Virus record (IMG/VR): IMGVR_UViG_3300044680_000280
Location: 62,001-126,000 of that record
Reading direction: 5' to 3' (one strand)
DNA: 64,000 nucleotides
Each line of letters begins with the position of its first letter. Within the stretch, counting starts at the first letter, position 1. Of the stretch, positions 1,962 to 64,000 are shown in pieces. Under the pieces are notes generated by a model that was given only the letters and a program-made list of their open reading frames with translations, had not been told where the DNA came from and did no database searches. Position numbers and translations under genes: made by a program.

Positions 1962-4900
1962 TGATTTGTCACATAATTTCTGGATATGTCTTTGGGACCA
2001 CCAATTTCTGTATCGAAGACCGTGGCGAATCCTGTGACGGTTGACGTGCCATACACTGTTCCCATTAGATTAGAAACGAATTCGACGTTCCCGGTGACGT
2101 CACAGGAACCGTCCGACTCTCCTGCGGCATCGATGGGGATAGCGTAGTCGGCAACGCACTCGGAGTTCGACGTAATGTTGGCACCGACTCCAATTGTGGT
2201 CGTTGCGGACGCGATGATCGTAGAGTTGGCATCGATTGTGGACGTATCGTGACCGTGGACGAAGATCGTGAGGGAATCACTGGTCGAAACCGCATCCGAA
2301 AGGGTCTCGCGATGATTGACGTTAATCGCATAGCTATTGGGCACGCACACGGAGTTGGCGGTGACCGTCGAGGAGACATTGAGAGTCTTAGTACCGTTTG
2401 CAGTGATCGAGGAGTTGGCCGTGACGGTCGCGGTGTCTGTCTTATAGTTGGCACCGATATTGGCTGTAACTGTAGAGTTTGCCGTAATGGCCGATTGACC
2501 GGTTACATTGGTAATAGCTTCAACCGTGAGAGTGGCGTATGCCTCAATGTTGACGTAGCCCGCCGCCTGCTGGTAGATGACATTTCCACCAACGATACAC
2601 CCGGACTCGGAGAAGCCCTGTCCGAATACGGCTCCACCAAGGAGGCCCGTAAGGTAAGAGGTACCGTAGCCAGCCGAGGCAATGCTTTGAACGACCTGTT
2701 CTCTGACCCCAGTGGTCGAAAGACCCGTAACTGCCCCAGAAATGTGATTTGCATATTCCGCATTTCCAGTAATGGTACCGACACCATCGGCTTCACATGG
2801 ATTGTCCCCGTAATACTGATTGCCAGGACCCATTATGGCCGTGGCCATGCCGGTAATAGAACCCGCAATATGGTTGTCAAACTCCGCGTCGCCGGACACG
2901 GTCGCGAACCCGTCCACCGTATTGAGGCTGGGAGCCCAGATCTTCCTGATACCACCATAGAGCTGACCGGTAGCGCCAGAGACGTCGGCTCCCGCATAAA
3001 CCCTGTCGAGGGTCAGAGTTGTGTCGTTCTGGATGGATTCAATGAGATAGTATCCCGATCCGCCTGGGGCTGTGCCGCCGTAGAATTGAAGTATTTCACT
3101 CGCGTATAGTTGGGTCGTGAAGGAAGTTCCGACTCCAGCAACCACTGCGGTCCCATTCGTTAGCGTAAACGTACCCGTGGCAGTCTCATTGAGATTGCTG
3201 AGTTCGGTTACATTGCAGGAGCCAGACGTCGAACCAGAAATGTGATTCGTGTACTCGACATCACCCGTAAGGGTCGACGAACCGCCAGCACCAATATCCC
3301 CACCATCGACGGGGCTAAGGGCAATGATGAGGCCGATGTTAGCCTCAACGTAGGAAAGACCGTACGTAAGACCCTCAATCCAATTGGCGGGTTCAACGAA
3401 GCCCTGGACATAACACTCACCTCGGCACGTAATACCCTGGTAAAGGGAAGCACCAGTCGAGGTCGTTCCCGTGTAGGACGTGCTCAAGGTGAGAGACGTT
3501 TCACTGGAGATTGACTGGATGTAGTAAGTACCTGTTGCAGCCGGCGAACCCTCTCGGAAAGTTAGGGACTGGCCGATGTACAGGTTCAGGAAACTCGTAC
3601 CGGTTCCAGTAACCGTTGCAGAACCATTCGTCAGGGCAACCGTCCCCTCGAGCTTCTGGAACTGCACCGAGATGAGCATCGTCGAGGCGATGAGGTCGAC
3701 GGTTGCGGTCCCGCTAATCGTTTGGAACGGCGCGTACAATGCAGCAACGTTGTCCGAGTCCGTAAGAGTCTCGAAACTATCCGTGAGGGTCTCGTGAACT
3801 CCTCGACTGACCTTGAGCTTGTCGCTCGTTGTCATCGAATCCGAAGCAGACGGATAGTACTTGGCCGTCGCGGAAGCCGTAGTGGTCGCCGAACCATTGA
3901 GACTCGTGGCCCCAGACGCAACAATCACGGTAACCAGGGAGTCCTTGGTGGTCACCGTGTCAGAGACGTTCGCATTCAAAACAACAATCGAACCCGCCTG
4001 ATCCGAAATTGCAATCGTGTCGGAAACCGACTGATGTAGTTCAGCATTGACGTTAGCCGTGACACTAGAGTCAGCCAAAACGGACGAGGTTCCCGTAGCA
4101 TTGATATAGTTCGTCAGGGAGTCGGACGTGGTGGCCGTGTCGGAAACCCCCTCCACCACCGTATGAACAACGGCAAGGGAGTCGGAAACTGTAAAGTCAT
4201 CGGAGACATTTTCGAAGTAGTTCGAGTTCTGACGGGCCGTGAGGGACGAGTCGGCGGTGATCGATGCATTCGCCGTAAAATTGGCGTCCGTCTGAATGGA
4301 GTCACTGATCGAAACAGAATCGGAGAGGTTTTCGTAGATGACAATGACAGCGGTTAGAGAATCCGTGACTGTAATCGTATCCGACGCGTGAATCTCATCG
4401 TCAGCAAGCGGAGATGCCGTGACCGAGGCACTTGCATTTAGAGATGCGGTAACCTCAAAAGATGCCGACGTGTTAAGGCTATCCGTAGGGGTAATCGTAT
4501 CGGACAGTTGCTCGTTAACAACGATGACGGCGACGAGCGAGTCGCTGATCGTAATGGTGTCAGAGAGTCGAGCCTCATCCTCGTCCGTAGCATTTGCTGT
4601 AACCGAGGAACTCGCGGAGAGGGAAGCGTCCGTTCCAAAAGATGCCGAGCTCGAAAGGGAGTCAGAATAGGCGACCGAGTCAGAAAGATTCTCGTAGGCG
4701 ACTATGACTGAACTGAAGGAATCGCTGATTGTAATAGTATCGGAAATGGGCTCGATGTGGTCAGCCGTAATAGCGGCTACGAAGGAGTCCGAGCCGTCAA
4801 GCATCGCTGAGGCTTCGTAAGATGATGTGCCAGTCAAAGAGTCGCTGATCGAGATTGTGTCGGAGATGTTTTGGGTGATGACACTCAGGACTGTCAGGGA

Positions 4901-7900: not shown

Positions 7901-10078
7901 ATCAGTGCACGTAAGGGTGTCAGCAAGTGGAATACTGTTATTCCTGCCGACTGCCAAGGAATCGGATACCGCAATTGTGTCACTGACCGAGATATGGTGA
8001 CCAGCAGAGGGCGAAAGAGAGTCAGAAATTGTAATCGAGTCGGACGTGCTGATAGCTCCGTACGTCCGTTGTTTCTGAAGTGGTTGTCGACGTCTCGGAA
8101 GCTTTGCGTAGTAGGGAACGGGCGGGTCGGCGCCCTGAGTGGCCGTGTTCGCTGATGTGTTGATATTCGCCGTGGTGGCGGTGGTGCCCGTATAAGGTTG
8201 GGCTAGAGTGAGCTGACCATTTCCCATTGTGTAACCACTATTCGTGGGAACAGTGGTCGTCATGGTCATGGAGGTGGAACTGTTAATTGATGATATCGTA
8301 TACGTGCCAGTTGCCGTCTCGCTCTCATAGTATAGAGTTACGGTTTGACCTGGGAATAGGTGAGTAAAATCCCCAGTATCAACTGCCCCTACGCCCCCGA
8401 CGGTGTTGCTTGCGGTGAGCGTTGTGGTGCCATTCGCATTTATACCGCAACTGCAATTGTAAATGGCTGCAATCGTGTACAACGGAGAAACGGTAACACC
8501 CACGGGACCCAATGGGGTAACGGACACTCCTGAGGTGTTCGCCGAACTGGTGTAATTCGTTGTTAGAGTCAACGAAGTGGTACTAGAGATGCTCTGAATG
8601 ACATAGGTGCCAGATGCGGTAGGGGAGCCCCCGCTAAAAGTTATCGATTGACCCGCAGCAAGATTCGTTGTAAAGCTGGTACTGGTACCAGTAACGGTTG
8701 CAGAACCATTAGTGAGGGCGACCGTACCTGGAATAGTGGATGGGGACCCTTGGTATGGGGTCGTCAAAGTCAGTGCGGTGTTACTCGAAATGGAAGCGAT
8801 GGTGTAAATACCGACCGATAGTAAGGCTCCAATTGTCGTTGCCGAGGCATAGTTCGTTGTTAGTGTCAGAGACGTTGTACTCGCAATAGCCGCGATAACG
8901 TAGGTGCCGGATGCGGTTGACGAGCTACCAGACGAGGCGCCACCACTGAACGTAACCGTCTGTCCTACAACCAAGGTAGTTGTAAAACTAGTGCCAGAGC
9001 CTGTTACTGTAGCCGATCCATTGGTAACAGTGACAGTACCTCCAATGGTACCTGGACCAGTAGAGAAGGAAATGGGTTGCCCGACAGCAAGCAGGGTTGA
9101 AAAACTAGTGCTCGTACCTGTAACTGTCGTTGAGCCATAAGTGAGTGCGGCAGTGCCGGCTATACTAGATTGAGAGGAAAAGGATACGATTTGCCCAGGG
9201 TACAACTGGTTCAAGTAGTTGTAGTTCCACGACAGAATCGTGGTTGGTGCCGTCGGAGTGACCGTGGTTGAACCGTTTGTAACCGAGTTCTGAAGACTTA
9301 CAATTGAGAACCCCGACCCGTTCCCCAAAAGGGTGTACGTAGCGCTAGTTCCAGCAAATGGCCTTAATGCAAATTCAACATTGTAGAAGTTCGGGGCTTG
9401 GTTGTTGAGGTCTGTTTCTCTAGTAAATGGCCAGTATCCGTAAAGGGTATTCAGATTGTCATATGTGGGGGAGAGTTGCTCGGACTCCCTTTCAATGGCC
9501 GCAATCGGCAGAGCCTCCAGCCACATTTTCAGACCAGATATCGAACCTATGAAGGTGTTCTGGAATGTGTTTGTGTACGTGTAGGCGCCGTAGTTGTAAT
9601 TGATACCCAGGCAAAATGTCTGCCCGAGCACTTGTGGGATAGTGGTGTTAGTGTAGTAACTGAGTGAGCTAGTAGGTGTGCCCACAGCCTTCGCAAAAAT
9701 GGTGACAACCGTAGAGGCCGTGTAGGCACTCATCGTCATTCCGACGAAGTACCATTGGTTGTTCTGTAGGGAGACAGTGGATCCGCTTGTAGTGACAACC
9801 GTAGAGGTAGGATCTCCCACCGCTAGAGTGAGCAGACCGGGGGACCCCGCTGCACCCGCGGAACCTTCAATAACTAGAGCGATAGTAGAGCCGCTGGCCG
9901 TCGAGGCCATCTGAAACAAGTAGGCATACGGGGCCCCGCTGCCGTTGTTGTTCAACGACTGAAAGTGCTGCATGTTGATAAACATGCAGATGGTGAAGCC
10001 GTAACCGTTCGAAGAAATGAGCGCGGGAGAGGGGGTCGCTACGAGACCGCCGGCACCTCCTGATAGGTATAAGGACAC
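1958..10078 (-). CDS. Giant fibre/adhesin-like virion protein (2706 aa): N-terminal LamG/ConA-like domain, nested TNGS modules, long Ser/Asp/Thr repeat stalk
   Basis: LamG-type motifs (QWYFVGMT...FIGSISGLKMW...LYGYWP), seven TNGS modules and ~1,400 aa of SDTITISDSL-type repeats; lies in the fibre gene cluster. Confidence 0.75.
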   Translation of the reverse strand: MSLYLSGGAGGLVATPSPALISSNGYGFTICMFINMQHFQSLNNNGSGAPYAYLFQMASTASGSTIALVIEGSAGAAGSPGLLTLAVGDPTSTVVTTSGSTVSLQNNQWYFVGMTMSAYTASTVVTIFAKAVGTPTSSLSYYTNTTIPQVLGQTFCLGINYNYGAYTYTNTFQNTFIGSISGLKMWLEALPIAAIERESEQLSPTYDNLNTLYGYWPFTRETDLNNQAPNFYNVEFALRPFAGTSATYTLLGNGSGFSIVSLQNSVTNGSTTVTPTAPTTILSWNYNYLNQLYPGQIVSFSSQSSIAGTAALTYGSTTVTGTSTSFSTLLAVGQPISFSTGPGTIGGTVTVTNGSATVTGSGTSFTTTLVVGQTVTFSGGASSGSSSTASGTYVIAAIASTTSLTLTTNYASATTIGALLSVGIYTIASISSNTALTLTTPYQGSPSTIPGTVALTNGSATVTGTSTSFTTNLAAGQSITFSGGSPTASGTYVIQSISSTTSLTLTTNYTSSANTSGVSVTPLGPVGVTVSPLYTIAAIYNCSCGINANGTTTLTASNTVGGVGAVDTGDFTHLFPGQTVTLYYESETATGTYTISSINSSTSMTMTTTVPTNSGYTMGNGQLTLAQPYTGTTATTANINTSANTATQGADPPVPYYAKLPRRRQPLQKQRTYGAISTSDSITISDSLSPSAGHHISVSDTIAVSDSLAVGRNNSIPLADTLTCTDSVTAHPNKVAASSLSASSSFTASALAQHNPSLSDTISISDSLSSIIVLSVSVSDTVSVTDSLSIDANHIQSLSDTISATDSLSAQANRVISLSDTISTTDSVTCITTVHRSVSDTVTYTDSLTAYANHTAASSLSGSASVSASALAQHKASLSDTVSATDSVTATVVLNANVSDTITYSDTASAIAIREVAASLTANSTCSARSNSNYLNPVSDTVTFSDSLSVVLSGIPSLSDTITCTDSLTTDASYQAFAVIDGTDSLLAAITADHVESLSDTVTISDSLSTTLTIYKNVSDTVTISDSLQTDANHQVQASLTASSSVSASITAHDAASVSDSVSISDSVTSVIIVHANVSDTVTYSDTLETDANFTATSTIDADASVSASVTASHVETLSDTITVSDILTAVVVIQANISDTITSTDSLQAVASHTGTSTIDGTSSVSASITAHDSGSVTDTISISDSLTAVIVVYESPSDTITYADSIQTDANFTAHSNLNGSSSLTAAATADDELHLSDTISATDSVSAIVVAYEALSDSISTSDFLSTSANHAVSASIDGDSSITARSNSNYPTSVSDTISIYDSLTAQVVLTVSVSDSVSISDSLTSTADYEASAMLDGSDSFVAAITADHIITISDSITSSDSLTAQVVLTVSVSDTTTYEDSLTSFASFEAASAISASSTLTASVTADDELHLSDTISISDSLTAVIVINENLSDSVSYTDSLQTDAAYFVVSTISADSSVTANATGEDELHLSDTISITDSVSSVVVFTESLSDTISLTDFLQTSADVHATATLDGSASLSASVTGDDEIHLSDTVTITDSVTGIVVLHESVSDSVTTSDSLTADASFTASATLDGSSSLTANVTADDYVYLSDVITITDSATGIVVFHESLSDTIGCSDSLTADANFTVAASLNGTSSVTASSNAYEEVDISDSISITDTASAIVVLHETLSDTITSSDYLYTDANFTASSSINGDSTVTASATANLRESLSDTVTTSDSLTVLSVITQNISDTISISDSLTGTSSYEASAMLDGSDSFVAAITADHIEPISDTITISDSFSSVIVAYENLSDSVAYSDSLSSSASFGTDASLSASSSVTANATDEDEARLSDTITISDSLVAVIVVNEQLSDTITPTDSLNTSASFEVTASLNASASVTASPLADDEIHASDTITVTDSLTAVIVIYENLSDSVSISDSIQTDANFTANASITADSSLTARQNSNYFENVSDDFTVSDSLAVVHTVVEGVSDTATTSDSLTNYINATGTSSVLADSSVTANVNAELHQSVSDTIAISDQAGSIVVLNANVSDTVTTKDSLVTVIVASGATSLNGSATTTASATAKYYPSASDSMTTSDKLKVSRGVHETLTDSFETLTDSDNVAALYAPFQTISGTATVDLIASTMLISVQFQKLEGTVALTNGSATVTGTGTSFLNLYIGQSLTFREGSPAATGTYYIQSISSETSLTLSTSYTGTTSTGASLYQGITCRGECYVQGFVEPANWIEGLTYGLSYVEANIGLIIALSPVDGGDIGAGGSSTLTGDVEYTNHISGSTSGSCNVTELSNLNETATGTFTLTNGTAVVAGVGTSFTTQLYASEILQFYGGTAPGGSGYYLIESIQNDTTLTLDRVYAGADVSGATGQLYGGIRKIWAPSLNTVDGFATVSGDAEFDNHIAGSITGMATAIMGPGNQYYGDNPCEADGVGTITGNAEYANHISGAVTGLSTTGVREQVVQSIASAGYGTSYLTGLLGGAVFGQGFSESGCIVGGNVIYQQAAGYVNIEAYATLTVEAITNVTGQSAITANSTVTANIGANYKTDTATVTANSSITANGTKTLNVSSTVTANSVCVPNSYAINVNHRETLSDAVSTSDSLTIFVHGHDTSTIDANSTIIASATTTIGVGANITSNSECVADYAIPIDAAGESDGSCDVTGNVEFVSNLMGTVYGTSTVTGFATVFDTEIGGPKDISRNYVTNQ
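3745..8055 (-). repeat. Coding tandem repeat: ~20-aa units arranged in a 60-aa (180-nt) super-repeat
   Basis: Two SDxxxxSDSL units alternate with one LxGSSSxxA unit. A 39-nt identical DNA stretch occurs at 5946-5984 and 6126-6164, exactly 180 nt apart. Confidence 0.9.
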
Positions 10079-10098
10079 GTCAGATCAACCTTTCTAGG

Positions 10099-11904
10099 TT
10101 ATGCAACCTGACGCTTGATGCCTTGCCACGTGTGACCAAAGGCCGGGGTCTCCAAGTACAAAGACGTCGTAGTCGAAGTCGTTCCCGTGTAATTGGACGC
10201 CAAGGTCAACGAGGTGCCGCTTCCAATTGCTGAAATGGTGTACGGGACTCCGGGCTGAGAAGCAAAGGAGATGACTTGCCCAACGGTAAGTTGTAGAAAG
10301 CTCGACGTAGCAGTTGTAACTGTCGCGGACCCGTTCGTCACATTGACGTTAGTCAGGCTGTCAAATGCACTAGTCAGTAGGGCGACTCCGCTTCGGTTCT
10401 CAACGATGATGACTATGTGATCGGGAAGGGAACCACTGAAAGCGGACGCGACACTGAAGGGGGAGCTAAACTTGCTGACGTACCCTGTTAGGGTCGTACC
10501 GGTACTTGTTGCTCCAGTATAGGGAGAGGTCATCGTCAGAGTGGGATTGCCCGTCAAAGTCACTGACCCCGAGCCAGAGTTATTTGCATTAGTAGTTAGC
10601 GTTAGCGAAGTATTGCTGGTGATCGTCGCAATGACATATGTGCCCGTCGGAGGAGTGGTTCCACCTGAAAATGTAACTGCCTGGCCAGGAACGAACTGGG
10701 TCAAAAAGCTTGTGGAGGTTCCCGTAACGGTTGAAGAACCGCTCGTAGTGGCGACTGTACCACTACCCGTAACGCTGCTACCAATGGCCAAAACCATGTA
10801 TGGGACACCGGCTTGACTCGCGAGAGTTATGGTTTCACCCACAGCAGCAGTAAAGGCCGTCGCGCTAGAGAGGACGGAGTATCCGTTCGTAGCATAAACC
10901 GTTGTGCTTCCACCTGGAGCCGTGGCAGCGGACGTGCCGACGTTCATTGTACCTATGAGTCGGGCATTCGGAGGAGATGTCAAGGTCACAGGAGCGGAAA
11001 CCCCGGTTACCTCTTCACCGTAAGTCAATCCGCCGTCCGATGTGCCCGTCGCGTATACGTTAATGATCGACGGTGCGACAGGAGTTGTATTCGTGGTGGC
11101 TTTGACTTGGACGAAAATGTCCTCGAACTCATTGAGAAATGAGTACATAGACAGTGAGTTTGAAGTCGTGCCTGAGTAAGTGGTGGTCAGACTCAAGGAG
11201 TACGCACTTGCGATAGAAGCTATCGTGTAGGTAGTCCCCAGAGACCCTGCAAACTGTACAACCTGATTGACGTACAAGGTGGAGTTGAAATACGTTCCTC
11301 CGTTGGTGTACAAGGTGGCGCTCGACGACGTCGCACCACTGTAAAAACCCGTCAGAGTGAGAGTCGTATTGGTAATACTGGAGATCGTGTAATTCACCCC
11401 GGGTTGCGAGCTGAAACTGATCAATTGACCGATGCTCAACGGAAGGTAGGTGAAGCTGGCCCCAGACGTCCCCGTGCCCGTATAGTTCGTGGTTAGGGTC
11501 AAGGAGGTGTTGTTTGTGATCGACCCAATGACGTAGGTCCCCGTTGCCGTACCACCACCGAACGTGATCATCTGACCCACGGACAACTGAGTCAGGAAGC
11601 TCGTGCTAGACCCTGTCACGGTTGCAGAGGCGTTCGTGACAGTTACGGTCCCCGTTCCTGTGTATCCCGTAAGGCTCGTGGTGACGCTCGTCGAACCATT
11701 CGTCACCGTCACCGTGCCAGAAATGGAAGCCATCGAGACGGCCGTCGAACCATTCGTCACCGAGACAGATCCAGGAAGCAGAACTATCCCGTTCGCCGTG
11801 TTGTCGATGTACGAAGAGGCTGTCGCGGACGTTGAGCCCAGGTTCGCCAGAGCCATCGGCAAGGGCTGAGCCGGTGCCGCGTAATTGGACGAAACTATGC
11901 TCAT
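10099..11904 (-). CDS. Virion/fibre-associated protein (601 aa): small core inflated by six TNGS modules; paralog of 13015-15333
   Basis: Shares core segments with the 772-aa ORF (SATASSYIDNTAN, FEDIxVQ, DGGxTYGE, PPNARL, LPDHIV, ENRSG, HTWQG). Confidence 0.75.
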   Translation of the reverse strand: MSIVSSNYAAPAQPLPMALANLGSTSATASSYIDNTANGIVLLPGSVSVTNGSTAVSMASISGTVTVTNGSTSVTTSLTGYTGTGTVTVTNASATVTGSSTSFLTQLSVGQMITFGGGTATGTYVIGSITNNTSLTLTTNYTGTGTSGASFTYLPLSIGQLISFSSQPGVNYTISSITNTTLTLTGFYSGATSSSATLYTNGGTYFNSTLYVNQVVQFAGSLGTTYTIASIASAYSLSLTTTYSGTTSNSLSMYSFLNEFEDIFVQVKATTNTTPVAPSIINVYATGTSDGGLTYGEEVTGVSAPVTLTSPPNARLIGTMNVGTSAATAPGGSTTVYATNGYSVLSSATAFTAAVGETITLASQAGVPYMVLAIGSSVTGSGTVATTSGSSTVTGTSTSFLTQFVPGQAVTFSGGTTPPTGTYVIATITSNTSLTLTTNANNSGSGSVTLTGNPTLTMTSPYTGATSTGTTLTGYVSKFSSPFSVASAFSGSLPDHIVIIVENRSGVALLTSAFDSLTNVNVTNGSATVTTATSSFLQLTVGQVISFASQPGVPYTISAIGSGTSLTLASNYTGTTSTTTSLYLETPAFGHTWQGIKRQVA

Positions 11905-13014: not shown

Positions 13015-15333
13015 TTAGGCCACCACCTTCTGCGTAACGTCGATAGACCAGTGGATCGTCGTCGACGCCAAACCCGTAACCGAGATTTGCAAGGTGTTCG
13101 TGCTGAGAGCGACCGAGGAGTTCATAGAGCTACCTGAACCGTTCGTGAGGATATTGTAGGCCGCGGGAGTCGAAGGGTTCAGAGTGGCGGCGGAGGACCC
13201 CGCTCGTTGAACCAGGAACTCGTAGTCGGCGCTATAGAGGTCTCCCGCTCCGCCCGTGTCTACCCCTAGAACGTTGACAATGAAGCGACTGGCGGAGCTT
13301 GCAGCCATCGCAATCGACACGGCCGTCGTGGACGTGGAGTTTGTGGTCGTCTGGGAGTAGATGATCGAGTTGACGGGATTTGTACCGCTAGAGTTCAGGA
13401 CCGTCTCGGTTGCCGTGATGGGAATCGAAGAGGCGCCGCTGATCGAATTGACCGTTCCAGTAACTGACCCGGGTCCCGTTGCCGTGACGTCTCCCGTAAT
13501 GGCCGTGATGGCCGAGGTGGAACTCGATTCCAATGGGTCGACGAATTGGCGTTTGGTGCCTTGCCATGTGTGCGTGAATGCCTCGATGTAAATAGAAGCA
13601 GTCGAAGCCCCGGCACCCGTATAGTTCGTGGTCAAAGTCAACGAGGTCCCACTAACCGAGGAAACGGTATAGGGAACTCCCAACTGGGAGCTGAACGAGA
13701 TCATTTGACCGGGGGTCAGGAAGGAGGCCAGAGTCGCGCTCGCCGTGACAAGGTTCGTTCCTGGAGTTAGAGCCGCGGTCGGGGTGATCGCCGTATTGAA
13801 AAGAGTCTGTCCGCTCCTGTTTTCGGCAATGAGGACAATATGGTCAGGGAGAGTTCCCCCATATGCCGCTGCAATGCTGAAAGGAAGACTGAATTTGTTG
13901 ACGTAAGCGGTAAGAGCTCCCGTGGTCGTAGTCGTACCCGTGAAGGGGGTGTTCAAAACGAACGTCGGTTGACCTGTCATGGTCGCTGAGCCCGTCCCAA
14001 CCCCAGTAGCCGTGTTGATAGTCAGAGAGGTATTACTGGCGATGGCCGTAATGACGTACGGCACGGTACCAGTCAGGTAGGTAGACTGGATGACTACCTG
14101 TCCAACAGAGAAGGTGGTCGTAAACGTCGTGCCAGACCCCGTCACCGTCGTGGTGCCGTTGAATGTTACCGTAGCCGAGGATTGAGTCGTGGCCGGTATC
14201 GCGATGATCGTGTACGGGACTCCCACCTGACCCGTGCTGAACGTCACCGTCATTCCAACTAGCAAGCTAGAAATGGTGGTAGACGTGCCAGAAACAATGG
14301 AGGAACCGTTCGTAGCGGTAAGAGTGGAACCACCAATGTTGGACGATGGAGCGGCCGTAGTACCTAGATTGATGATTCCAACGAGTCTAGCGTTTGGCGG
14401 GGCCGTCAAAGTAACTGGACCTGAAACCCCGTTAACCTGCTCACCGTACGTGGTACCGCCATCGGTCGACCCCGTGGCGTAAATGTTTAGGATAGCTGGA
14501 GCTGTTGGAGTGCTGGAAACCGTAACCCTAAACTGAACCAGAATGTCCTCGAACTGATTGAGCAACGAGTACATTTGGAGTCCGCCCGCTGTCATTGTCG
14601 CGTTTACCGACGTCGTGGATCCCGTGTAAACGGATCCAAGGGTGAGGGACGTAGAGCTTTGAATCGAAGAAATGTAGTACGTACCCGAAGCCGTCGGAGT
14701 ACCGCCACTGAACGTGACGTACTGACCCGCGTAGAAGCTTGTAAAACCGGTTCCCGTAACCGTAACGGACCCGTTCGTAAGGGCAACGGATGCCGTAGCC
14801 CCCGTCGAGTTCCCCGTGTAGTTGCTCGTCAGAGTCATGACATATGGGCTCGTGATCGAGGAGACCACGTACGACGTACCCAACGTGCCCGCGAACTGAA
14901 CCGACTGACTCTGGTACAGAGCCGAATTGAAGTACATACCCCCGTTCGTGTACAGGGTTGCGGTCGAGGATGTTGCGCCGCCGTAATTACCCAAGAGAAG
15001 CAACAGAGTGGTGCTAAAAACCTCAAGAATCGTGTAGCTCACACCAGGCTGGGAACTGAAACTAATGACCTGGCCCGCGCTTAAGGGCGTGAAGTTTGCC
15101 GTGCCCGCCGTAACGATCTGCGATCCCTGGGTCACCGTGACGGTTCCCGAGATTGACGCCATTGTGACGGTTGCGGAACCGTTCGTGAGGAGAACCGTTC
15201 CAGGGAACAATAAAGACCCGTTCGCCGTGTTGTCGATGTAGCTCGACGCCGTGGCCGAGGCACTGGTAAGGCCCGCCAGGGACATACCCAAAAGCTGATT
15301 GGGCGAGGAGTAGATAGGCGAAAGAGTGCTCAT
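13015..15333 (-). CDS. Virion/fibre-associated protein (772 aa): paralog of the 601-aa protein with six TNGS modules and a C-terminal domain shared with the 2178-aa fibre
   Basis: Core identity with 10099-11904. The last ~165 aa closely match the C-terminus of 18206-24742. Confidence 0.75.
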   Translation of the reverse strand: MSTLSPIYSSPNQLLGMSLAGLTSASATASSYIDNTANGSLLFPGTVLLTNGSATVTMASISGTVTVTQGSQIVTAGTANFTPLSAGQVISFSSQPGVSYTILEVFSTTLLLLLGNYGGATSSTATLYTNGGMYFNSALYQSQSVQFAGTLGTSYVVSSITSPYVMTLTSNYTGNSTGATASVALTNGSVTVTGTGFTSFYAGQYVTFSGGTPTASGTYYISSIQSSTSLTLGSVYTGSTTSVNATMTAGGLQMYSLLNQFEDILVQFRVTVSSTPTAPAILNIYATGSTDGGTTYGEQVNGVSGPVTLTAPPNARLVGIINLGTTAAPSSNIGGSTLTATNGSSIVSGTSTTISSLLVGMTVTFSTGQVGVPYTIIAIPATTQSSATVTFNGTTTVTGSGTTFTTTFSVGQVVIQSTYLTGTVPYVITAIASNTSLTINTATGVGTGSATMTGQPTFVLNTPFTGTTTTTGALTAYVNKFSLPFSIAAAYGGTLPDHIVLIAENRSGQTLFNTAITPTAALTPGTNLVTASATLASFLTPGQMISFSSQLGVPYTVSSVSGTSLTLTTNYTGAGASTASIYIEAFTHTWQGTKRQFVDPLESSSTSAITAITGDVTATGPGSVTGTVNSISGASSIPITATETVLNSSGTNPVNSIIYSQTTTNSTSTTAVSIAMAASSASRFIVNVLGVDTGGAGDLYSADYEFLVQRAGSSAATLNPSTPAAYNILTNGSGSSMNSSVALSTNTLQISVTGLASTTIHWSIDVTQKVVA

Positions 15334-16597: not shown

Positions 16598-17314
16598 TCA
16601 AATGGTGATGGTGTATGTCACCGCTAAAGTATCATTGGTGTACAGCGTTCGCTGCGTGAACAGAATCTCGTTGTTCATCGCGCCGGCCGAAGAGGCATTG
16701 AAGAGCGCCGTGAGCTGAACCGCCTGCGAGGAACCGCCCGTATACGTGAACGTGTGGGAAATCGTCGCCGTCGTTGTGCCCGTCGTGTGGGCGTACGTGC
16801 CTTGGGTTCGTCCGAGGCCGTTCGTCGTAAGCTCACCGGAGAGAGTCGTATCACTGTAGGAGACCGCCGTGGCGGCCGTTGCGCCGTACGACGTGCCCGT
16901 GTAGTTCCCCGTCAAAACGATTGCCGTGCCCGAAACCGACAAGACCGTGTAAACGGTGTCGCTGGTGTCGGAGGTGAACAGGATGGTCGCTCCAGGGTAG
17001 AGGGAGCCAGTCTGAGACGTGGACGCCGTAACGTTGGCCGACCCGTTGGAAACGTTGAACGTACCGGACAACGAAGTGCCCGCCGAGTTCGACAGGGCGA
17101 TGTAGTTGAAGCCGTTGGTTGCCAGGCCCGTCGTTGCGTACCCCTGAATGAAGAGCTGGTCGATGCCGCCGCTCAACACGAGGTTGTGCGCGACTTCGTC
17201 GTCTTCTTCCTGGCGGTACATCCAAAGCCCTCGCGACTCATCGAAGTCGTAGGCTCGCTCGACATGGATCAAAGCCGAGGATCGAAAACGGGGGTGGGTT
17301 TCTTGAATCAGCAT
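16598..17314 (-). CDS. Tail/baseplate-associated protein (238 aa) with one inserted TNGS module
   Basis: HNLV..G.D, YIALSN...DTTLSGELTTNGLGR and ALFNASSAG...DTLAVTYTI resemble phage fibre-attachment proteins. Start moved to ATG 17314 because AGGAG lies upstream. Confidence 0.7.
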   Translation of the reverse strand: MLIQETHPRFRSSALIHVERAYDFDESRGLWMYRQEEDDEVAHNLVLSGGIDQLFIQGYATTGLATNGFNYIALSNSAGTSLSGTFNVSNGSANVTASTSQTGSLYPGATILFTSDTSDTVYTVLSVSGTAIVLTGNYTGTSYGATAATAVSYSDTTLSGELTTNGLGRTQGTYAHTTGTTTATISHTFTYTGGSSQAVQLTALFNASSAGAMNNEILFTQRTLYTNDTLAVTYTITI

Positions 17315-46457: not shown

Positions 46458-47225
46458 TCAGATAATTCCTGTTACGCCGGGTGGAAGACCACTGTCCTGG
46501 TTACCAGTGAGACCGATATTGGACAAGGTGGACGTACCACTAGAATTGGCTTGATTTGCGGAAGCAGGTTGGGTATACGCGGTCCGAGTATTCTGGCTCG
46601 CAAATGTCGGAGCAAGGGTTTGTTGGGCGGCCGAATACGGAATCGCCAAAATGGTCTCCTGCACCTTGAAGGACCAGGACAATTTAAACATGAAAGGGGT
46701 GTCGTCCGTCTCCTCCGGATCGAACGTCTTAAAATACCCGAGGTAGATGCCCCTATCGTATTGAAGCATGATCCGACCTTGAAGAACGATGTTCCCAAAG
46801 GGATCGTACACGGACCCGTTATTTCGGTAGAGGTCGAAGAGGTCCCTGTATCGGTCCCATGCAATCGTTTGCTGCCGAACGACGCTCGCGGTCCCCGTGT
46901 AGAGATTGAGAAAAGCGCCCGTCACACCGTCCGCCGATATATCGGTCATCTCGTCGCCCCAGTGCTGCTCAACGAACCCGCCCCTAGTCTGAATAGGTTC
47001 AATCTTCTTTGTGAGAGTCTCAGAAAACGTTGAGGGATTGATATGCATAACAAGAGCGTGTGGAAGGAGAGCACGGCGCGTATCGAGCGGACTTGTAACC
47101 TGAAATGACATCGGAATGAACGAACGCCTGCTGTCAACACCATGAACGTATGCTGGCGTCTTTGTGGGCGCCGGCTCCCGCTTGAAGTTGTCGGGATTGG
47201 ACGGAGAATGGAGAGGTCCGGGCAC
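46458..47225 (-). CDS. Tail tube initiator/baseplate centrepiece (gp48/gp54-like, 255 aa)
   Basis: LVMHINPSTF...IQTRGGFVEQHWGDEM...YLGYFKTF...PFMFKLSWSF; directly follows the tape measure gene. Confidence 0.7.
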   Translation of the reverse strand: MPGPLHSPSNPDNFKREPAPTKTPAYVHGVDSRRSFIPMSFQVTSPLDTRRALLPHALVMHINPSTFSETLTKKIEPIQTRGGFVEQHWGDEMTDISADGVTGAFLNLYTGTASVVRQQTIAWDRYRDLFDLYRNNGSVYDPFGNIVLQGRIMLQYDRGIYLGYFKTFDPEETDDTPFMFKLSWSFKVQETILAIPYSAAQQTLAPTFASQNTRTAYTQPASANQANSSGTSTLSNIGLTGNQDSGLPPGVTGII

Positions 47226-56230: not shown

Positions 56231-56246
56231 TGAGAAGGTACACCGA

Positions 56247-59944: not shown

Positions 59945-60010
59945 GGTTCTTCCTTACATTACCCCGCACAAGTGAAACCGGACGGTTTCTCTTACACCGT
60001 AGAGCTTGGC

Positions 60011-60976
60011 CTAAGAAGAGAATTTGTCGAGAACCGTTCCGTCTTTCGTGTACGCTTCTTCGAGGTTAGGGACCAGGTACTGAGAGCGCAACGTGGACGG
60101 CTCGTGCCCGACCGCGTCGGACGTCTCATCCAACGCTTTCAAGAACTCCTTTTTCAGGAGCTTTTCTCGCTCCTTCTTGTCTTCAGGGAGTTCCTTGCCC
60201 TTCGACCGGATCGCCTTGAGACGCTCCTGCATTTCCCGGTTCGCATGATACCCCCGGAGATCCTTTGCCGTAACGTCAAAATCCTTCAGATAGGCGTTGA
60301 CTTTCTCAGCCGTAGCCTTCGGAAGAAGTTCGGAATTCTCCCCTTTGGCCGCTTCGTACGCTTTCTTGAGGGCCTTTTTGATGCCGGCGTCCGTGACCTT
60401 TTTGTCGTGATCCACCCCGGACTTGCCGACGTACCTAATGGTCGCCCCACCCGAACCGAAGCTCACGTGCTTCTTGCGCCACCCGGTGACCCCAAAGTGC
60501 CCGTCCTTGGCGCTGTCGTCATTGCCAACCCGCTCATACGTATGGTCAATGAGGGCGACCGCCAGGGCCGTTTGAGCCGTGTCCTCATCGTCGGAGGATA
60601 GGTCGCTCTTGTACTTAGTACGGAGTTTACCGATACTCTTTTTAAGGGCATCGATTCGCTCAGCCTTCTTCTTGTCCCGATTGGCAATTTGACGGTCCGA
60701 ATACTCGTAGACGGTCATTTCATCACCGTCTTTGGTCTTGACCTTCTTCTTGGACTTGTAGCTAGCGGCCACCCGCTCCACCATTGCCTTGTTGTGTTTG
60801 AAGTACTCAACCTCAGAAAGCCGCTTCTCTGCCTCACCCTTCGAAGGATAACAGCCCCCATTCCAGTCTTTATTATTCGGAGACCGAACGCAGAACTCCC
60901 CCTTCTCTTTGACGATAATGGCTACACGTGTCGCCGCAGCAATACGCCATACGACTCGAGGAGTTAGAGAGTCCAC
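60011..60976 (-). CDS. DNA topoisomerase IB (bacterial/viral short type, 321 aa) with N-terminal accessory domain
   Basis: Catalytic set in order: ERVGN (Arg), YVGKSG (Lys), TAKDLR (Arg), VGH (His), RSQYL (Tyr nucleophile). Confidence 0.9.
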   Translation of the reverse strand: MDSLTPRVVWRIAAATRVAIIVKEKGEFCVRSPNNKDWNGGCYPSKGEAEKRLSEVEYFKHNKAMVERVAASYKSKKKVKTKDGDEMTVYEYSDRQIANRDKKKAERIDALKKSIGKLRTKYKSDLSSDDEDTAQTALAVALIDHTYERVGNDDSAKDGHFGVTGWRKKHVSFGSGGATIRYVGKSGVDHDKKVTDAGIKKALKKAYEAAKGENSELLPKATAEKVNAYLKDFDVTAKDLRGYHANREMQERLKAIRSKGKELPEDKKEREKLLKKEFLKALDETSDAVGHEPSTLRSQYLVPNLEEAYTKDGTVLDKFSS

Positions 60977-60999
60977 CCTAGTACGATCCGATAAGAACG

Positions 61000-61644: not shown

Positions 61645-61667
61645 TTTAATCTCCCTTACCTACGATC

Positions 61668-64000
61668 TCAGAGGCTCGCCCTGAGGTTGAACGTGAGTAC
61701 GAGGTATAGAAGGGGGAAGATGGGCTGGTAGTACGCCTGGAAGTCCAGGGTGGTCGGATCGTTCGCGTCCACGTTGGCAGCGACGCCCGTGTAAGCCGCG
61801 ATGATTTCCGCCTGAATGAGACCCTTCAAGAGAGCGGTCATCGAGACGACGACTTCATTCGTTCGCGAGGCAAGGAACTTGGTGCCAACGAACGAGTCGA
61901 GAGCGCTTCGGCTTTGCTCTTGTGTGAAGTCGGAGATCTGAGTGACCGTCGGAAGACGGGTCAAAATCGACGTCATGTTCGTCGTCAGACCCTGGCGGAT
62001 TCGGAGGAATCCGTTACCCAGGTCGTCGAGGAGCGTGACGCCCGCGACTGCCGTCTGGTTTGCCGTGACGGGGTCGAGAGTTCGCTCGATGCTGGTAAAG
62101 CCCAGAATCTTGCGGTGCGTATAGGGAGTCGCCACGTCGATTGCTGGGGAGCAGGACGCTCCTGCAACCGCCGCCGCAAAGAAGGTTCCGTCCACGATGC
62201 TGTCGTAGGACTGGCCGGTCTCGTCGGTCAGGGTGATATCCGAGCTGTCGGGGTAGAGAGCCAGGATACGGTTCGAATTGAGGCTCTTGGCAACGGACTG
62301 AGCATTGCTTGGAGTGGTTCCCGAAGCGAATCCGATCATACCCATGCGCTCTGCTTGATTTCGAATGCTCGACTGAACTTCGCAGTGCTGCGTGAGGTAC
62401 GCAAACACTGAGGTGTCCGTCGCGAGCGGAACGATGACGTCGGGCTTGACATTGCCAGGAAGCGGGGTCGCGAGACCTTGAATCGCAGCGATGAAACTCG
62501 CATCCGACGCCTGGTTCGTGTTCGCGACGGTGAGAACCTGGTCGATACCAACGAGAACCGCACCGTTCTGGACCATCAGATAGAAGGCAAGGGAGACGCG
62601 GTTCTGCGGGCTGACCGCACCGAAGTTGGCCTCGACTGTCTTCTGCTGCTGGTAAAGACGAGTCGTGTAGTCCTGCTTCATGTACGTGTAGGACACGTAG
62701 TAGGAGTCACCAATCGAAGGCGCGACGCCCGAGGGGTCGAACGTTTGAACCGTACCTGTATCGTTCACTCCGACACCGACCGTGTTCGAAACCGTTGTCT
62801 CGAGACCGGGAATGGCGTACGTCGGAATCGACGAGGACACCTGGAAGGTTTCGCTTACGGTCAGGGTGAAGCTTCCAGCCGAGTCGTACGAGCCGCTCGA
62901 GGCTGGGAGAACTGTGAAGCGAAGTCCCGTGACTTCGTCAACATAGGTCTGACCAGGGTAACCGACGTTGTTCGTACCCGTACCCGTACCGCTCGCATTC
63001 GAGGAGGTGACGACGTAGTTGTTCGTGGCGTCTTCGCCGTTATCCCCATCCGTACCAGGCGTGAGCCCGATGTTCGTAGTGGGATTGAAGGCCGAATTAC
63101 CCGAGGTGACGAAGGCGATGCTAGAGGATGCCGCACCGACGGTCAAAGACTCGAACGTGATGTAGTTCAAGCCATTGAGCTGATCGACATAAGCGACCGC
63201 GCCGCTTACGAAGCCCGACGTGGCCATCAGCTCATCGACAACTTCGTAGGCGAAAACCTTCGTCTGCGTTGCCGTCTGATTGACGGTGAGTCCGAGAGTC
63301 GCGTTCGACGTGCCCGAACCGATGGAGATGATCGAGTTGGCGTTATTCGTGGGGCTCGTCAAACGGAGCTTGTTGACGTTTCCAAGAGTTCCCGCCGACG
63401 CAACACCCGAAAGGCCCGGAACCGTATTGATGAGCGTCACAAGGGTCGACGTGGTAACGGAAGTACCAGCCGTCAGGGTGATGGTGTACTGAACCCCATT
63501 GACCGTAATGATGAGCTGGTCGTTGACACCCGCCGTGATGTTGAACGGTCCCGCAACCGATCCGAGAATCGTAGCGGGCTTGTTGATCGCACCAGGGGTG
63601 CCGTTCGCCGACTGGAAGGTCGTGAATCCAAGAACCGTCTCAACGGTTCCCTGCTCAATCGTGATGTTCGACACACTATCGAAACCGCCGGGGAGAGCCG
63701 CCGGAGTCGAGTAGCTGAAGATGTGAAAGAGCACGTCTCCGCCCGAGATCTGCGATAGGCCGGCGAGATGGTTCGGCGCCGTACCCGAGAAGGTGGCGTT
63801 CGCATCGATTGCCGCGTTGATCGCAGCCACGATAGCCGTAGGGGTCAGACTTCCGATAGGGATCGGGGCTACGACCGCCGTGCCGTCAATGAGCAGGTTG
63901 AGGTAGGGGGCCACTTGGGCTGTCGTCGCCGAATTCGTTGTACCCGTGTAAGATGCACTGAGCGTAACGACCGTACCAACAACCGTGGAAACGGTGTACG
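61668..64000 (-). CDS. Tail sheath protein, partial (5' end beyond the window)
   Basis: C-terminal sheath core (ERMGMIG, DGTFFAAAVAG, TPYTHRKI.GF, RIRQGLTT, FVGTKF, YQPIFPLLY). The frame stays open upstream of 63914 to the window end. Confidence 0.88.
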   Translation of the reverse strand, partial: YTVSTVVGTVVTLSASYTGTTNSATTAQVAPYLNLLIDGTAVVAPIPIGSLTPTAIVAAINAAIDANATFSGTAPNHLAGLSQISGGDVLFHIFSYSTPAALPGGFDSVSNITIEQGTVETVLGFTTFQSANGTPGAINKPATILGSVAGPFNITAGVNDQLIITVNGVQYTITLTAGTSVTTSTLVTLINTVPGLSGVASAGTLGNVNKLRLTSPTNNANSIISIGSGTSNATLGLTVNQTATQTKVFAYEVVDELMATSGFVSGAVAYVDQLNGLNYITFESLTVGAASSSIAFVTSGNSAFNPTTNIGLTPGTDGDNGEDATNNYVVTSSNASGTGTGTNNVGYPGQTYVDEVTGLRFTVLPASSGSYDSAGSFTLTVSETFQVSSSIPTYAIPGLETTVSNTVGVGVNDTGTVQTFDPSGVAPSIGDSYYVSYTYMKQDYTTRLYQQQKTVEANFGAVSPQNRVSLAFYLMVQNGAVLVGIDQVLTVANTNQASDASFIAAIQGLATPLPGNVKPDVIVPLATDTSVFAYLTQHCEVQSSIRNQAERMGMIGFASGTTPSNAQSVAKSLNSNRILALYPDSSDITLTDETGQSYDSIVDGTFFAAAVAGASCSPAIDVATPYTHRKILGFTSIERTLDPVTANQTAVAGVTLLDDLGNGFLRIRQGLTTNMTSILTRLPTVTQISDFTQEQSRSALDSFVGTKFLASRTNEVVVSMTALLKGLIQAEIIAAYTGVAANVDANDPTTLDFQAYYQPIFPLLYLVLTFNLRASL

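What the first reader, a model, noticed from the sequence alone, without database searches (positions are those of the whole stretch)
2958..64000. A ~70-75-aa domain behaving like a mobile in-frame insertion across the virion proteins
Seen: the module GT(V/F)xxTNGSxxVT...(L/F)xxGQxIxF...YxIxSI..TxLTLxxxYxG occurs about 24 times. Counts: 7 in the 2706-aa protein (cluster 8150-9295, plus ~2958-3186 and ~3440-3652), 6 each in the 601- and 772-aa proteins, 1 in the 238-aa protein, 3 in the 2178-aa fibre (~19505-19713, ~21478-21686, ~24297-24524), and a C-terminal half at the sheath window edge. More divergent relatives appear in the 1965-aa and 1-1961 proteins. The copies are not tandem: they interrupt unrelated scaffolds and each other. 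Inference: a compact beta domain with adjacent termini is repeatedly copied into surface loops, a domain-level diversification system (or a selfish coding element) that decorates the tail. I could not discern inverted repeats, target duplications or a transposase, so the mechanism is unknown.
Basis: partly seen in the sequence, partly recalled or inferred. Interest (0 to 1): 0.88.

Follow-up and report, generated by a model that had tools for sequence, protein, structure and literature searches.

The report
Self-nesting tail domain inserted into phage proteins
A small (~65-70 aa) beta-barrel domain related to the anchor domain of phage and pyocin tail fibres occurs 24 times in six tail proteins of a 407-kb soil phage; relatives show empty sites, so copies were inserted in frame into unrelated proteins and into each other, long ago and with no sign of a dedicated mobility machine.

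Summary
A divergent copy sits in the 1965-aa protein. Shuffled controls reach 7.4 bits against 14-72 for full copies.

The module is homologous to the N-terminal OB-like anchor domain of the F2-pyocin side fibre PyoF13 (25ve) and of 'distal tail protein gp20' (23gd). It has no Pfam or NCBIfam model.

Nine modules are split. Their pieces splice back into full-length modules around one or more complete inserted copies, up to three deep. AlphaFold2 models one nested unit confidently (pLDDT 86.6).

Empty sites exist:
- 22 orthologues of the 238/249-aa protein lack its module.
- 20 sheath orthologues lack one, and a sister phage carries one about 20 residues away.
- The 601- and 772-aa paralogues each hold one private extra module.
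- The 2706-aa protein holds 7 where its orthologue holds 2.

Even the closest copies are old: at most 69% aa and 64% nt identity, with synonymous sites saturated. Five of six positions in the 601/772 family are conserved. No transposase, endonuclease or reverse transcriptase was detected.

Verdict: repeated in-frame domain insertion is supported; an active selfish element or diversification system is not.

The parts
9164..9289 (-). 2706-aa protein, module A, N-part (aa 264-305; beta1-beta2-alpha-beta3). Outermost host of the nested cluster.
   Evidence: HMM positions 5-36. The spliced A aligns full length. The same outer module is present in orthologue L001.
9047..9163 (-). 2706-aa protein, module B, N-part (aa 306-344).
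   Evidence: HMM 1-37, E 7.6e-9. Part of the AF2 model, pLDDT 86.6.
8816..9046 (-). 2706-aa protein, module C (aa 345-421). A complete copy nested inside B, third level.
   Evidence: HMM 1-67, 70 bits. AF2 secondary structure is beta-beta-alpha-beta-beta-beta.
8729..8815 (-). 2706-aa protein, module B, C-part (aa 422-450; beta4-beta5).
   Evidence: HMM 36-62, which complements the B N-part.
8486..8728 (-). 2706-aa protein, module D (aa 451-531). A complete copy inside A.
   Evidence: HMM 1-68, 76.7 bits.
8459..8485 (-). 2706-aa protein, module A, beta4 piece (aa 532-540, LYTIAAIYN).
   Evidence: Read from the sequence. The spliced A aligns to the HMM.
8219..8458 (-). 2706-aa protein, module E (aa 541-620). 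A divergent complete copy inserted between beta4 and beta5 of A.
   Evidence: HMM 2-67, 49.5 bits.
8168..8218 (-). 2706-aa protein, module A, beta5 piece (aa 621-637).
   Evidence: Weak HMM hit at positions 47-67. The spliced A aligns.
3443..3646 (-). 2706-aa protein, module F (aa 2145-2212).
   Evidence: 74.5 bits. No counterpart in the 1176-aa orthologue of L001.
2969..3175 (-). 2706-aa protein, module G (aa 2302-2370). Lies between the conserved GDVEYTNHI and FDNHIAG anchors.
   Evidence: 69.2 bits. The L001 orthologue has only ~30 aa between the same anchors.
11725..11772 (-). 601-aa protein, module m1, N-hairpin (aa 45-60).
   Evidence: HMM 1-16. Spliced with aa 204-253 it aligns full length.
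11662..11718 (-). 601-aa protein, module m2, N-hairpin (aa 63-81).
   Evidence: HMM 1-21. Contiguous with the rest of m2 in P0001 and in the 772-aa paralogue.
11443..11652 (-). 601-aa protein, module m3. A private, complete copy nested in m2, which is nested in m1.
   Evidence: 92.5 bits. Absent from P0001 and the 772-aa paralogue. Sister to m5 of the same protein (0.86).
11311..11442 (-). 601-aa protein, module m2, C-part (aa 155-198).
   Evidence: HMM 23-67, 45 bits.
11146..11304 (-). 601-aa protein, module m1, C-part (aa 201-253).
   Evidence: HMM 6-67, 58 bits.
10774..10902 (-). 601-aa protein, module m4, N-part (aa 335-377; through beta4).
   Evidence: HMM 2-48.
10552..10761 (-). 601-aa protein, module m5. 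A complete copy nested in m4 between beta4 and beta5.
   Evidence: 70.8 bits. The position is conserved in P0001 and the 772-aa paralogue.
10486..10545 (-). 601-aa protein, module m4, C-part (aa 454-473; beta5).
   Evidence: HMM 49-68.
10156..10347 (-). 601-aa protein, module m6 (aa 520-583).
   Evidence: 72.8 bits.
15154..15201 (-). 772-aa protein, module m1, N-hairpin (aa 45-60).
   Evidence: HMM 1-16.
14953..15147 (-). 772-aa protein, module m2. A complete copy nested in m1.
   Evidence: 67.8 bits.
14791..14943 (-). 772-aa protein, module m1, C-part (aa 131-181).
   Evidence: HMM 11-66, 49.5 bits.
14590..14790 (-). 772-aa protein, module m3. A private complete copy.
   Evidence: 59.5 bits. 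Absent from the 601-aa paralogue and P0001. TACACGGG occurs at both junctions.
14179..14325 (-). 772-aa protein, module m4, N-part (aa 337-385).
   Evidence: HMM 2-62/2-49.
13975..14172 (-). 772-aa protein, module m5. Nested in m4.
   Evidence: 51.4 bits.
13906..13962 (-). 772-aa protein, module m4, C-part (aa 458-476).
   Evidence: Weak HMM hit at 51-68. The spliced m4 aligns.
13588..13779 (-). 772-aa protein, module m6.
   Evidence: 62.4 bits.
16868..17065 (-). 249(238)-aa protein: a single module inserted in an unrelated ~177-aa scaffold.
   Evidence: 56.4 bits. 22 orthologues lack it; it is a clean 70-aa block in alignment A6.
24308..24514 (-). 2178-aa fibre, module a (aa 77-145).
   Evidence: 18 bits, E 1e-4 with the broad HMM.
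21485..21676 (-). 2178-aa fibre, module b (aa 1023-1086).
   Evidence: 51 bits.
19511..19699 (-). 2178-aa fibre, module c (aa 1682-1744).
   Evidence: 48.6 bits. The similarity to the 249-aa protein extends ~50 aa past the module.
63921..64000 (-). Tail sheath: C-terminal half of a module that continues past the window edge.
   Evidence: The full module lies at window-equivalent 63921-64109 in the parent contig, 39.6 bits. It is absent from 20 sheath orthologues and sits at a different site in sister phage L071.
32970..33197 (-). 1965-aa protein: a divergent relative of the module (aa ~1755-1830), conserved at this site in orthologues.
   Evidence: hhalign of A9 against A5 gives probability 82.5%, E 9.9e-6. 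Orthologues L022, L063 and L034 hit the HMM directly.

Best explanation
The module is an autonomously folding beta-barrel of about 65 aa, with the order beta-beta-short helix-beta-beta-beta. It belongs to the same family as the N-terminal OB-like anchor domain of the F2-pyocin side fibre PyoF13 and of a 199-aa 'distal/minor tail protein'.

In this 407-kb soil jumbo phage two sub-lineages of the module have been duplicated to non-adjacent places:
- S1, within the 601-, 772- and 2706-aa proteins.
- S3, in the sheath, the 238/249-aa protein and the 2178-aa fibre.

A whole module plus a short linker is pasted in frame into a loop of an unrelated tail protein, or into one of three loops of another module: after beta2, between beta3 and beta4, or between beta4 and beta5. 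This gives nests up to three deep.

Shown: the module is a discrete homologous domain; split modules are complementary; empty sites exist in relatives; two different insertion sites occur in sister sheaths; the copies are old and under purifying selection.

Inferred:
- The events are rare illegitimate or short-homology recombinations (template switches) between module-coding DNA and other tail genes of the same genome.
- They survive because the module's N and C termini lie close together, so it can sit in a loop without breaking its host.
- The exposed barrels are useful, either as weak glycan or surface binders or as docking points between fibres, as in PyoF13.
For: Homology: profile A5 matches 23gd_B at E 3.4e-8 and 25ve_A at E 1.4e-7. 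PyoF13's N-terminal 'OB' domain anchors the side fibre (PMC13455828). The module matches the N-termini of PHROG tail-fibre and minor-tail families.

Discreteness and nesting:
- N- and C-pieces are complementary on the HMM.
- Spliced pieces align full length.
- AF2 of the nested unit gives pLDDT 86.6 and pTM 0.71, with the same strand order twice.
- Foldseek places ~76-81 aligned columns (about one module's length) of the model on phage tail proteins, including a 199-aa minor tail protein, at rmsd 1.6-3.3.

Empty sites:
- 249-aa protein against 22 orthologues.
- Sheath against 20 orthologues, with sister phage L071 filled ~20 aa away.
- 601 m3 and 772 m3.
- The 2706-aa protein against its 1176-aa orthologue: 7 modules against 2.

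Sub-lineages: all private copies fall in the S1 clade (0.92) or the S3 clade (0.91-0.96).

Age and selection: at most 69% aa and 64% nt identity; dS at least 1.5 or not computable; dN 0.2-0.8.

No machinery detected.

Generality: 3175 representative proteins match. 31 nested pairs occur in 27 of the 160 proteins analysed, at the same three loops. Nested doublets cluster by protein family rather than by inner or outer position.
Against: - No model coordinates were available, so the closeness of the termini and the packing of the outer half-modules are inferred rather than measured.
- Foldseek against the PDB gave only weak matches; the best E was 0.01.
- The whole 601-aa protein could not be modelled (pLDDT 34.5).
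- The module trees rest on ~65 columns, with local supports of 0.8-0.96 only.
- Only one independent orthologue exists for the 601/772 and 2706 proteins, so for some copies loss in the relative cannot be excluded.
- The junction repeats (8 nt) lie in a motif that every module carries, so they are not diagnostic.
- The function (binding or docking) is untested.
Confidence: 0.75

Rival explanations
1. The module is (or rides on) an active selfish coding element: an in-frame mobile cassette copied by a dedicated enzyme (homing endonuclease, transposase, or reverse-transcriptase-based copy-paste), comparable to inteins or mobile mini-domains.
For: Copies lie in six different genes. Two different insertion sites occur in sister sheaths. 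All private copies derive from two 'proliferating' sub-lineages. Short direct repeats flank two inserts.
Against: - No two copies exceed 64% nt identity, and synonymous sites are saturated.
- Family scans detected no endonuclease, transposase or RT in the 64-kb window or in 7 kb beyond it, though most ORFs matched no family.
- The repeat finder was not run; at this level of divergence no terminal DNA signature is expected.
- The same self-nesting occurs in bacterial surface proteins outside phages.
- Only ~71 kb of the 407-kb genome was examined.
Confidence: 0.06
2. The architecture is ancient and fixed. The window phage keeps the ancestral filled state, and the relatives have lost modules by deletion between repeats.
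For: 5 of 6 positions in the 601/772 family, the outer module A plus one inner copy of the 2706-aa protein, and the divergent copy in the 1965-aa protein are all shared with relatives. Repeats promote deletion.
Against: - The 249-aa site is filled once and empty 22 times.
- The sheath is empty in 20 relatives and filled at two different positions in the two closest phages.
- The 601 m3 and 772 m3 inserts are each private to one of three homologues, so at least one must be a gain.
Confidence: 0.08
3. There is no discrete inserted domain. The T/S/G-rich repeats are strands of a continuous beta-solenoid or fibre, and the apparent 'halves' are register shifts of a simple repeat.
For: The host proteins are 48-55% T+S+G+A. 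The AF2 model has one long strand (residues 110-127) running from the inner domain's tail into the outer beta4.
Against: - Solved homologues show a globular N-terminal domain.
- Shuffles score at most 7.4 bits.
- The halves complement each other exactly, and inserts are one or two whole modules long: 65-79 or 144-173 aa.
- No DNA tandem repeat is present.
- Single modules occur alone in unrelated scaffolds.
Confidence: 0.03
4. The spread reflects exchange of whole fibre genes or large gene segments between phages (mosaicism), not copying of the module itself.
For: - The 2178-aa gene is a lineage-specific insertion between two genes that are adjacent in relatives.
- The 772-aa and 2178-aa proteins share a C-terminal domain at 68% identity.
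- The similarity between the 249-aa and 2178-aa proteins runs ~50 aa beyond the module.
Against: The inserts in the 249-aa protein, the sheath and the 601/772 proteins are module-sized blocks inside otherwise collinear orthologous proteins. Segment exchange does not produce that.
Confidence: 0.08

Closest known systems
N-terminal OB-like anchor domain of F2-pyocin side fibre PyoF13 (PDB 25ve/25vj) and of 'distal tail protein gp20' (PDB 23gd); PHROGs 1980, 28473, 9922, 17834
   Same: Sequence-homologous over the whole ~63-aa module: E 1.4e-7 and 3.4e-8, plus the PHROG hits. Both are small beta-barrels in tail proteins.
   Different: In those proteins the domain is single and N-terminal, where it docks a fibre onto the tail. 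Here it is internal, present up to 7 times per protein, nested in itself, and also found in a sheath. No Pfam or NCBIfam model covers it.
Accretion of Ig-like and other accessory domains in phage structural proteins (Fraser et al. 2006, from my own knowledge; tail sheath survey PMC9230969)
   Same: Small beta domains are added in variable numbers to sheath, fibre and baseplate proteins, away from the conserved core. They are thought to be exchanged horizontally and to aid adhesion or stability.
   Different: The fold is different (an OB-like barrel, not an Ig sandwich). The domain nests recursively in its own loops. Here the events are documented by clean empty sites in ~20 orthologues and by two alternative sites in sister sheaths.
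Nested ('Russian-doll') domain organisation of T4 gp18-type sheath proteins
   Same: Domains are inserted into loops of other domains, so outer domains are made of discontinuous segments (my own knowledge; consistent).
   Different: In gp18 the nested domains are different folds and the arrangement is fixed. Here one fold is inserted into copies of itself, and copy number varies between close relatives.
Inteins and homing-endonuclease-borne in-frame insertions
   Same: In-frame insertions into conserved proteins, with filled and empty alleles among relatives.
   Different: Scans detected no splicing or endonuclease domain. The insert stays in the mature protein as a structural domain. The copies are ancient and divergent.

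Membership tests
PyoF13 / gp20-type N-terminal tail-fibre anchor (OB-like) domain | Significant sequence similarity over the whole domain | tested here: met
   A profile of 42 modules matches 23gd_B residues 4-67 at E 3.4e-8 and 25ve_A residues 7-67 at E 1.4e-7. PHROG 1980 and 9922 N-termini also match.
PyoF13 / gp20-type N-terminal tail-fibre anchor (OB-like) domain | Small five- or six-stranded beta-barrel fold | tested here: inconclusive
   AF2 gives pLDDT 86.6 with beta-beta-alpha-beta-beta-beta twice. BFVD matches to a minor tail protein and tail fibres have rmsd 1.6-3.3 over 76-81 columns. PDB Foldseek gave only E>=0.01, and 25ve and 23gd were not among its top 50 hits. No coordinates were available to inspect.
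PyoF13 / gp20-type N-terminal tail-fibre anchor (OB-like) domain | Single copy at the N-terminus of a fibre or tail protein | tested here: not met
   All 24 copies are internal. There are up to 7 per protein, and many are nested.
PyoF13 / gp20-type N-terminal tail-fibre anchor (OB-like) domain | Docks the protein onto the tail by forming a ring around a shaft | not testable with these tools
   Described for PyoF13 in PMC13455828. Nothing here addresses assembly.
Promiscuous accessory domains of phage virion proteins (domain accretion) | The same small domain in several unrelated structural proteins, with copy number varying between related phages | tested here: met
   Six host proteins. Empty sites in relatives. 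BFVD hits in sheath, baseplate wedge, fibre and tail tip proteins.
Mobile genetic element (transposon / homing element / intein) | An associated mobility enzyme or splicing domain | tested here: not met
   Pfam, PHROG and NCBIfam scans of 29 ORFs of at least 150 aa in the window show none. The only nucleic-acid enzymes are a helicase and a topoisomerase IB, and most ORFs matched no family.
Mobile genetic element (transposon / homing element / intein) | Near-identical copies indicating recent movement | tested here: not met
   Maximum 69% aa and 64% nt identity; dS saturated.
Mobile genetic element (transposon / homing element / intein) | Terminal repeats or target-site duplications | tested here: inconclusive
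   Two private inserts are flanked by ~8-nt identical stretches (ACGGGGAC; TACACGGG). These lie in the YTG-coding motif that every module carries.
Diversity-generating retroelement or other programmed diversification | A reverse transcriptase plus a near-identical template/variable repeat pair | tested here: not met
   Family scans detected no RT in the window. No repeat pair exceeds 64% nt identity. No DNA tandem repeats were found. The remaining ~340 kb of the genome was not examined.

The most novel reading that the evidence does not exclude
The two proliferating sub-lineages (S1 and S3) are propagated by a dedicated, still unrecognised copy-and-paste process. One candidate is recombinase- or replication-coupled template switching that targets loop-coding DNA of tail genes. 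That would make this a true 'domain-level mobile element': one that spreads as an in-frame protein module and is self-compatible enough to nest recursively.
Probability: 0.07. Interest if true: 0.9.

Novelty: new variant of a known kind. Interest (0 to 1): 0.6.

Why it matters
Adding accessory domains to phage virion proteins is a known theme, but the steps are rarely caught. Here one small fold can be followed as it enters a sheath, a small conserved tail protein and several fibres. About 20 orthologous empty sites are available for comparison, and two alternative insertion sites occur in sister phages.

The fold also tolerates insertion of its own copies at three loops, up to three levels deep, and this recurs in unrelated phage and bacterial surface proteins.

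That gives three things:
- An uncatalogued domain family: no Pfam or NCBIfam model, but 3175 representative clusters.
- A natural data set on where domain insertion is tolerated.
- A compact, insertion-tolerant scaffold that protein engineers could use.

It also warns annotators that the '601/772/2706-aa' giants are mostly stacks of one module.

Tried and rejected
- AF2 of the whole 601-aa protein with a 3-sequence alignment failed (pLDDT 34.5).
- tblastn of the 2706-aa protein and of one module against GenBank phages found nothing, probably because of low-complexity masking.
- megablast of 24 kb of the window found nothing.
- The search for homologous proteins restricted to the non-module core (aa 250-330) returned nothing, not even the known orthologue.
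- Metagenome and IMG/VR scans for 601-like proteins gave only one independent orthologue.
- The 50-kb virion regions of the nearest GenBank relatives (LR745208.1, Tunturi_5) contain no module.
- The 2178-aa fibre has no close homologue in IMG/VR, so its three sites could not be tested.
- The closest relative by baseplate protein (69%) has no 601/772-like gene where one would be expected.
- Pfam DUF7933 co-occurs with the module in bacterial proteins but is a different domain.
- The DGR and transposon readings were rejected for lack of any enzyme hit or near-identical repeats.
- The paper describing PDB 23gd could not be identified with certainty.

Full report
**Context**

All long ORFs of the window lie on the minus strand. 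They form the tail part of a virion module:
- tail sheath, 61668-63914, continuing past the window
- a helicase and a topoisomerase IB
- a Baseplate_J-like 1158-aa protein, 24770-28246
- downstream of it, very large T/S/G-rich proteins of 2178, 249, 772, 601 and 2706 aa

The window is part of IMG/VR contig UViG_3300044680_000280, 406,734 bp. It is therefore a jumbo phage. The nearest GenBank relatives are a 485-kb uncultured phage and Tunturiibacter (Acidobacteriota) phage Tunturi_5, at 35-40% sheath identity. IMG/VR holds about 50 related jumbo-phage contigs, with 33-69% identity in the baseplate protein.

Yes. jackhmmer from a single copy converges on 23 domain hits in four proteins. The last 86 nt of the window encode the C-terminal half of a further copy, in frame with the sheath. 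In the parent contig this is a complete module at window-equivalent 63921-64109, inside a ~1500-aa open frame.

In 250 composition-matched shuffles of the host proteins the best domain score is 7.4 bits, against 14-72 bits for full copies.

Profile-profile comparison gives probability 82.5%, E 9.9e-6. Orthologues in related phages hit the HMM directly at that position. A '1-1961 protein' does not exist.

**What the module is**

It has no Pfam or NCBIfam model. It matches the first ~70 residues of PHROG tail-fibre and minor-tail families.

A profile of 42 modules matches two solved structures over its whole length (weaker with 16 copies):
- 23gd_B, 'distal tail protein gp20', residues 4-67, E 3.4e-8
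- 25ve_A, F2-pyocin side fibre PyoF13, residues 7-67, E 1.4e-7

In PyoF13 this N-terminal 'OB' domain forms a pseudo-six-fold ring that anchors the side fibre to the central fibre. Its authors describe it as structurally similar to the decoration domain of T5 pb9 (PMC13455828). pb9 and phage depolymerase N-termini appear as weak hits here.

Against 1.84 billion representative proteins the profile finds 3175 proteins at E<=1e-3. Many of them carry multiple copies, up to 15 stretches. Sampled contexts include:
- another jumbo phage on a 333-kb contig
- a podo/sipho-like phage
- a tail sheath
- bacterial surface proteins carrying Peptidase_C25, DUF7933 and CLIPPER domains

**Nesting**

Nine of the 24 modules are split. 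In the 2706-aa protein the parse is A-N [B-N [C ] B-C ] [D ] A-beta4 [E ] A-beta5. In the 601-aa protein it is m1-N [m2-N [m3 ] m2-C ] m1-C, followed by m4-N [m5 ] m4-C.

The pieces are complementary on the HMM. For example, positions 1-37 pair with 36-62. When spliced, they align along the full length of the HMM.

In 160 module proteins I found 31 such pairs in 27 proteins. The split points cluster at three places: HMM positions 14-17, 30-37 (the dominant site) and 45-46. Inserts are one module long (65-79 aa) or two (144-173 aa).

AlphaFold2 on the B[C]B unit, using 12 collinear nested units from different contigs as the alignment, gives pLDDT 86.6 and pTM 0.71. The order beta-beta-helix-beta ... 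beta-beta appears twice. Foldseek results:
- Several BFVD hits to single-domain regions of phage tail proteins span 76-81 aligned columns, about one module's length. One is a 199-aa minor tail protein (78 columns, rmsd 2.9, 37% identity).
- Longer matches go to a cyanophage sheath, baseplate wedge proteins and fibres.
- PDB hits are weak; the best E is 0.01.

In a tree of inner and outer modules, pairs cluster by protein family rather than by inner or outer position. Nested doublets therefore arose several times, or were homogenised within lineages.

**Filled versus empty sites**

1. The 249-aa protein (real start probably M12) has 22 orthologues of ~172-200 aa in related jumbo phages. All of them lack the module. 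In alignment A6 the window protein carries one clean 70-aa block between two conserved motifs.

2. Sheath. 20 orthologues at 57-66% identity have no module. The window phage and its closest relative L071 (74%) each have one, but at sites ~20 residues apart: before LNLxIDG in the window phage, and after ...TLATGAL in L071.

3. 601/772 family.
- The one independent orthologue (P0001, 538 aa) and the two paralogues share five module positions.
- The 601-aa protein has a private sixth module nested in m2. The 772-aa protein has a private sixth module after m1.
- Each is private to one of three homologues, so at least one is a gain.

4. 2706-aa protein.
- Its 1176-aa orthologue in L001 has the same outer module A at the same place, with one inner copy where the window protein has four.
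- The orthologue lacks F and G. G lies between two conserved anchors that are ~30 aa apart in the orthologue.

5. In 49 related loci the 10 kb downstream of the baseplate gene carry essentially no canonical module.

6. The 2178-aa gene is itself an insertion between two genes that are adjacent in five relatives. It has no close homologue in IMG/VR.

**Relationships and age of the copies**

Positional orthologues (m1, m2, m4, m6) cluster across phages. All private copies fall in one of two clades:
- S1, which contains 601 m3 and m5, 772 m3 and m5, and 2706 B-G (support 0.92).
- S3, which contains the 249-aa copy, the three 2178-aa copies and both sheath copies (support 0.91-0.96).

601 m3 is sister to m5 of the same protein, 300 aa away (0.86). 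This is dispersed duplication, not tandem duplication.

No pair exceeds 69% aa or 64% nt identity. dS is at least 1.5 or not computable, and dN is 0.2-0.8. No DNA tandem repeat is detectable.

The two private inserts of the 601/772 family are flanked by ~8 identical nucleotides in the YTG-coding motif. This is compatible with short-homology recombination but is not diagnostic.

Family scans detected no transposase, homing endonuclease or reverse transcriptase among the ORFs of the window; most ORFs matched no family.

**Interpretation**

The 'would refute' condition holds only for a subset of copies, namely five of six positions in the 601/772 family, module A, and the divergent copy in the 1965-aa protein.

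The stronger reading is not supported. Every copy is old, selection is purifying, and no machinery is present, so this is not an active selfish element or a diversification system.

The most economical mechanism is rare illegitimate or short-homology recombination within the tail gene cluster. Selection then filters the products, because this fold can sit in a loop and tolerates inserts at three of its own loops. Function is inferred only. The options are exposed barrels for weak surface or glycan binding, as proposed for accessory domains of sheaths (PMC9230969), or docking points between fibres by analogy with PyoF13.

**Limits**

- No coordinates were available, so termini distance and packing were not measured.
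- The trees are short.
- Only one independent orthologue exists for the 601/772 and 2706 proteins.
- About 340 kb of the genome was not examined.

Noticed in passing
window ~3780-8040 (2706-aa protein, aa ~680-2100): About 23 repeats of ~60 aa built on 'LSDTI(S/T)xSDSL...'; the motif recurs at 20/40-aa spacing. The L001 orthologue has only ~400 aa of this array. No DNA-level tandem repeat is detectable.
   Followed up: partly
window 13015-13512 and 18206-18712: The C-terminal ~165 aa of the 772-aa protein and of the 2178-aa fibre are 68% identical. This looks like a shared distal (probably receptor-binding) domain on two different fibres.
   Followed up: no
window 18206-24742: The 2178-aa fibre gene sits between the baseplate-J gene and the 278-aa gene. 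Those two genes are directly adjacent in five related jumbo phages, and the fibre has no close homologue in IMG/VR. It appears to be a lineage-specific acquisition.
   Followed up: partly
window 60011-60976: A 321-aa ORF gives a clear Pfam Topoisom_I (eukaryotic-type topoisomerase IB catalytic core) hit, E 2.4e-28, next to a large helicase.
   Followed up: no
window 1-1957: No long ORF, no family hit and no module downstream of the 2706-aa gene. This is possibly the end of the structural operon, or non-coding DNA.
   Followed up: no
window 61668-64000 and L070/L071: The sheath is a ~1500-aa open frame. Its extension contains a repeated small motif, L.L.IDG...V.LTAG..TP..IV..INAAID. The module of sister phage L071 is inserted inside one copy of that motif.
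   Followed up: partly
L010, L011, L012 (metagenomic contigs): The same module, including nested doublets, occurs in ~2370-aa bacterial surface proteins carrying Peptidase_C25, DUF7933 and DUF7507/CLIPPER domains. The family is therefore not phage-restricted.
   Followed up: partly
L009:10001-17368 (P0007, 333-kb contig): A 2455-aa protein of another jumbo phage looks like two 601/772-like units fused in one ORF, with 14 module hits in two parallel series.
   Followed up: no
window 44579-46456 and 46458-47225: Adjacent ORFs share a ~155-aa segment at 32% identity (E 3e-18). This is a local partial duplication unrelated to the module.
   Followed up: no
window 1958-10078, N-terminal ~250 aa: The N-terminus of the 2706-aa protein is conserved in the L001 orthologue (30% identity) and precedes the module cluster. 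I suspected a LamG/concanavalin-like domain from the sequence pattern, but no Pfam hit supports this.
   Followed up: no
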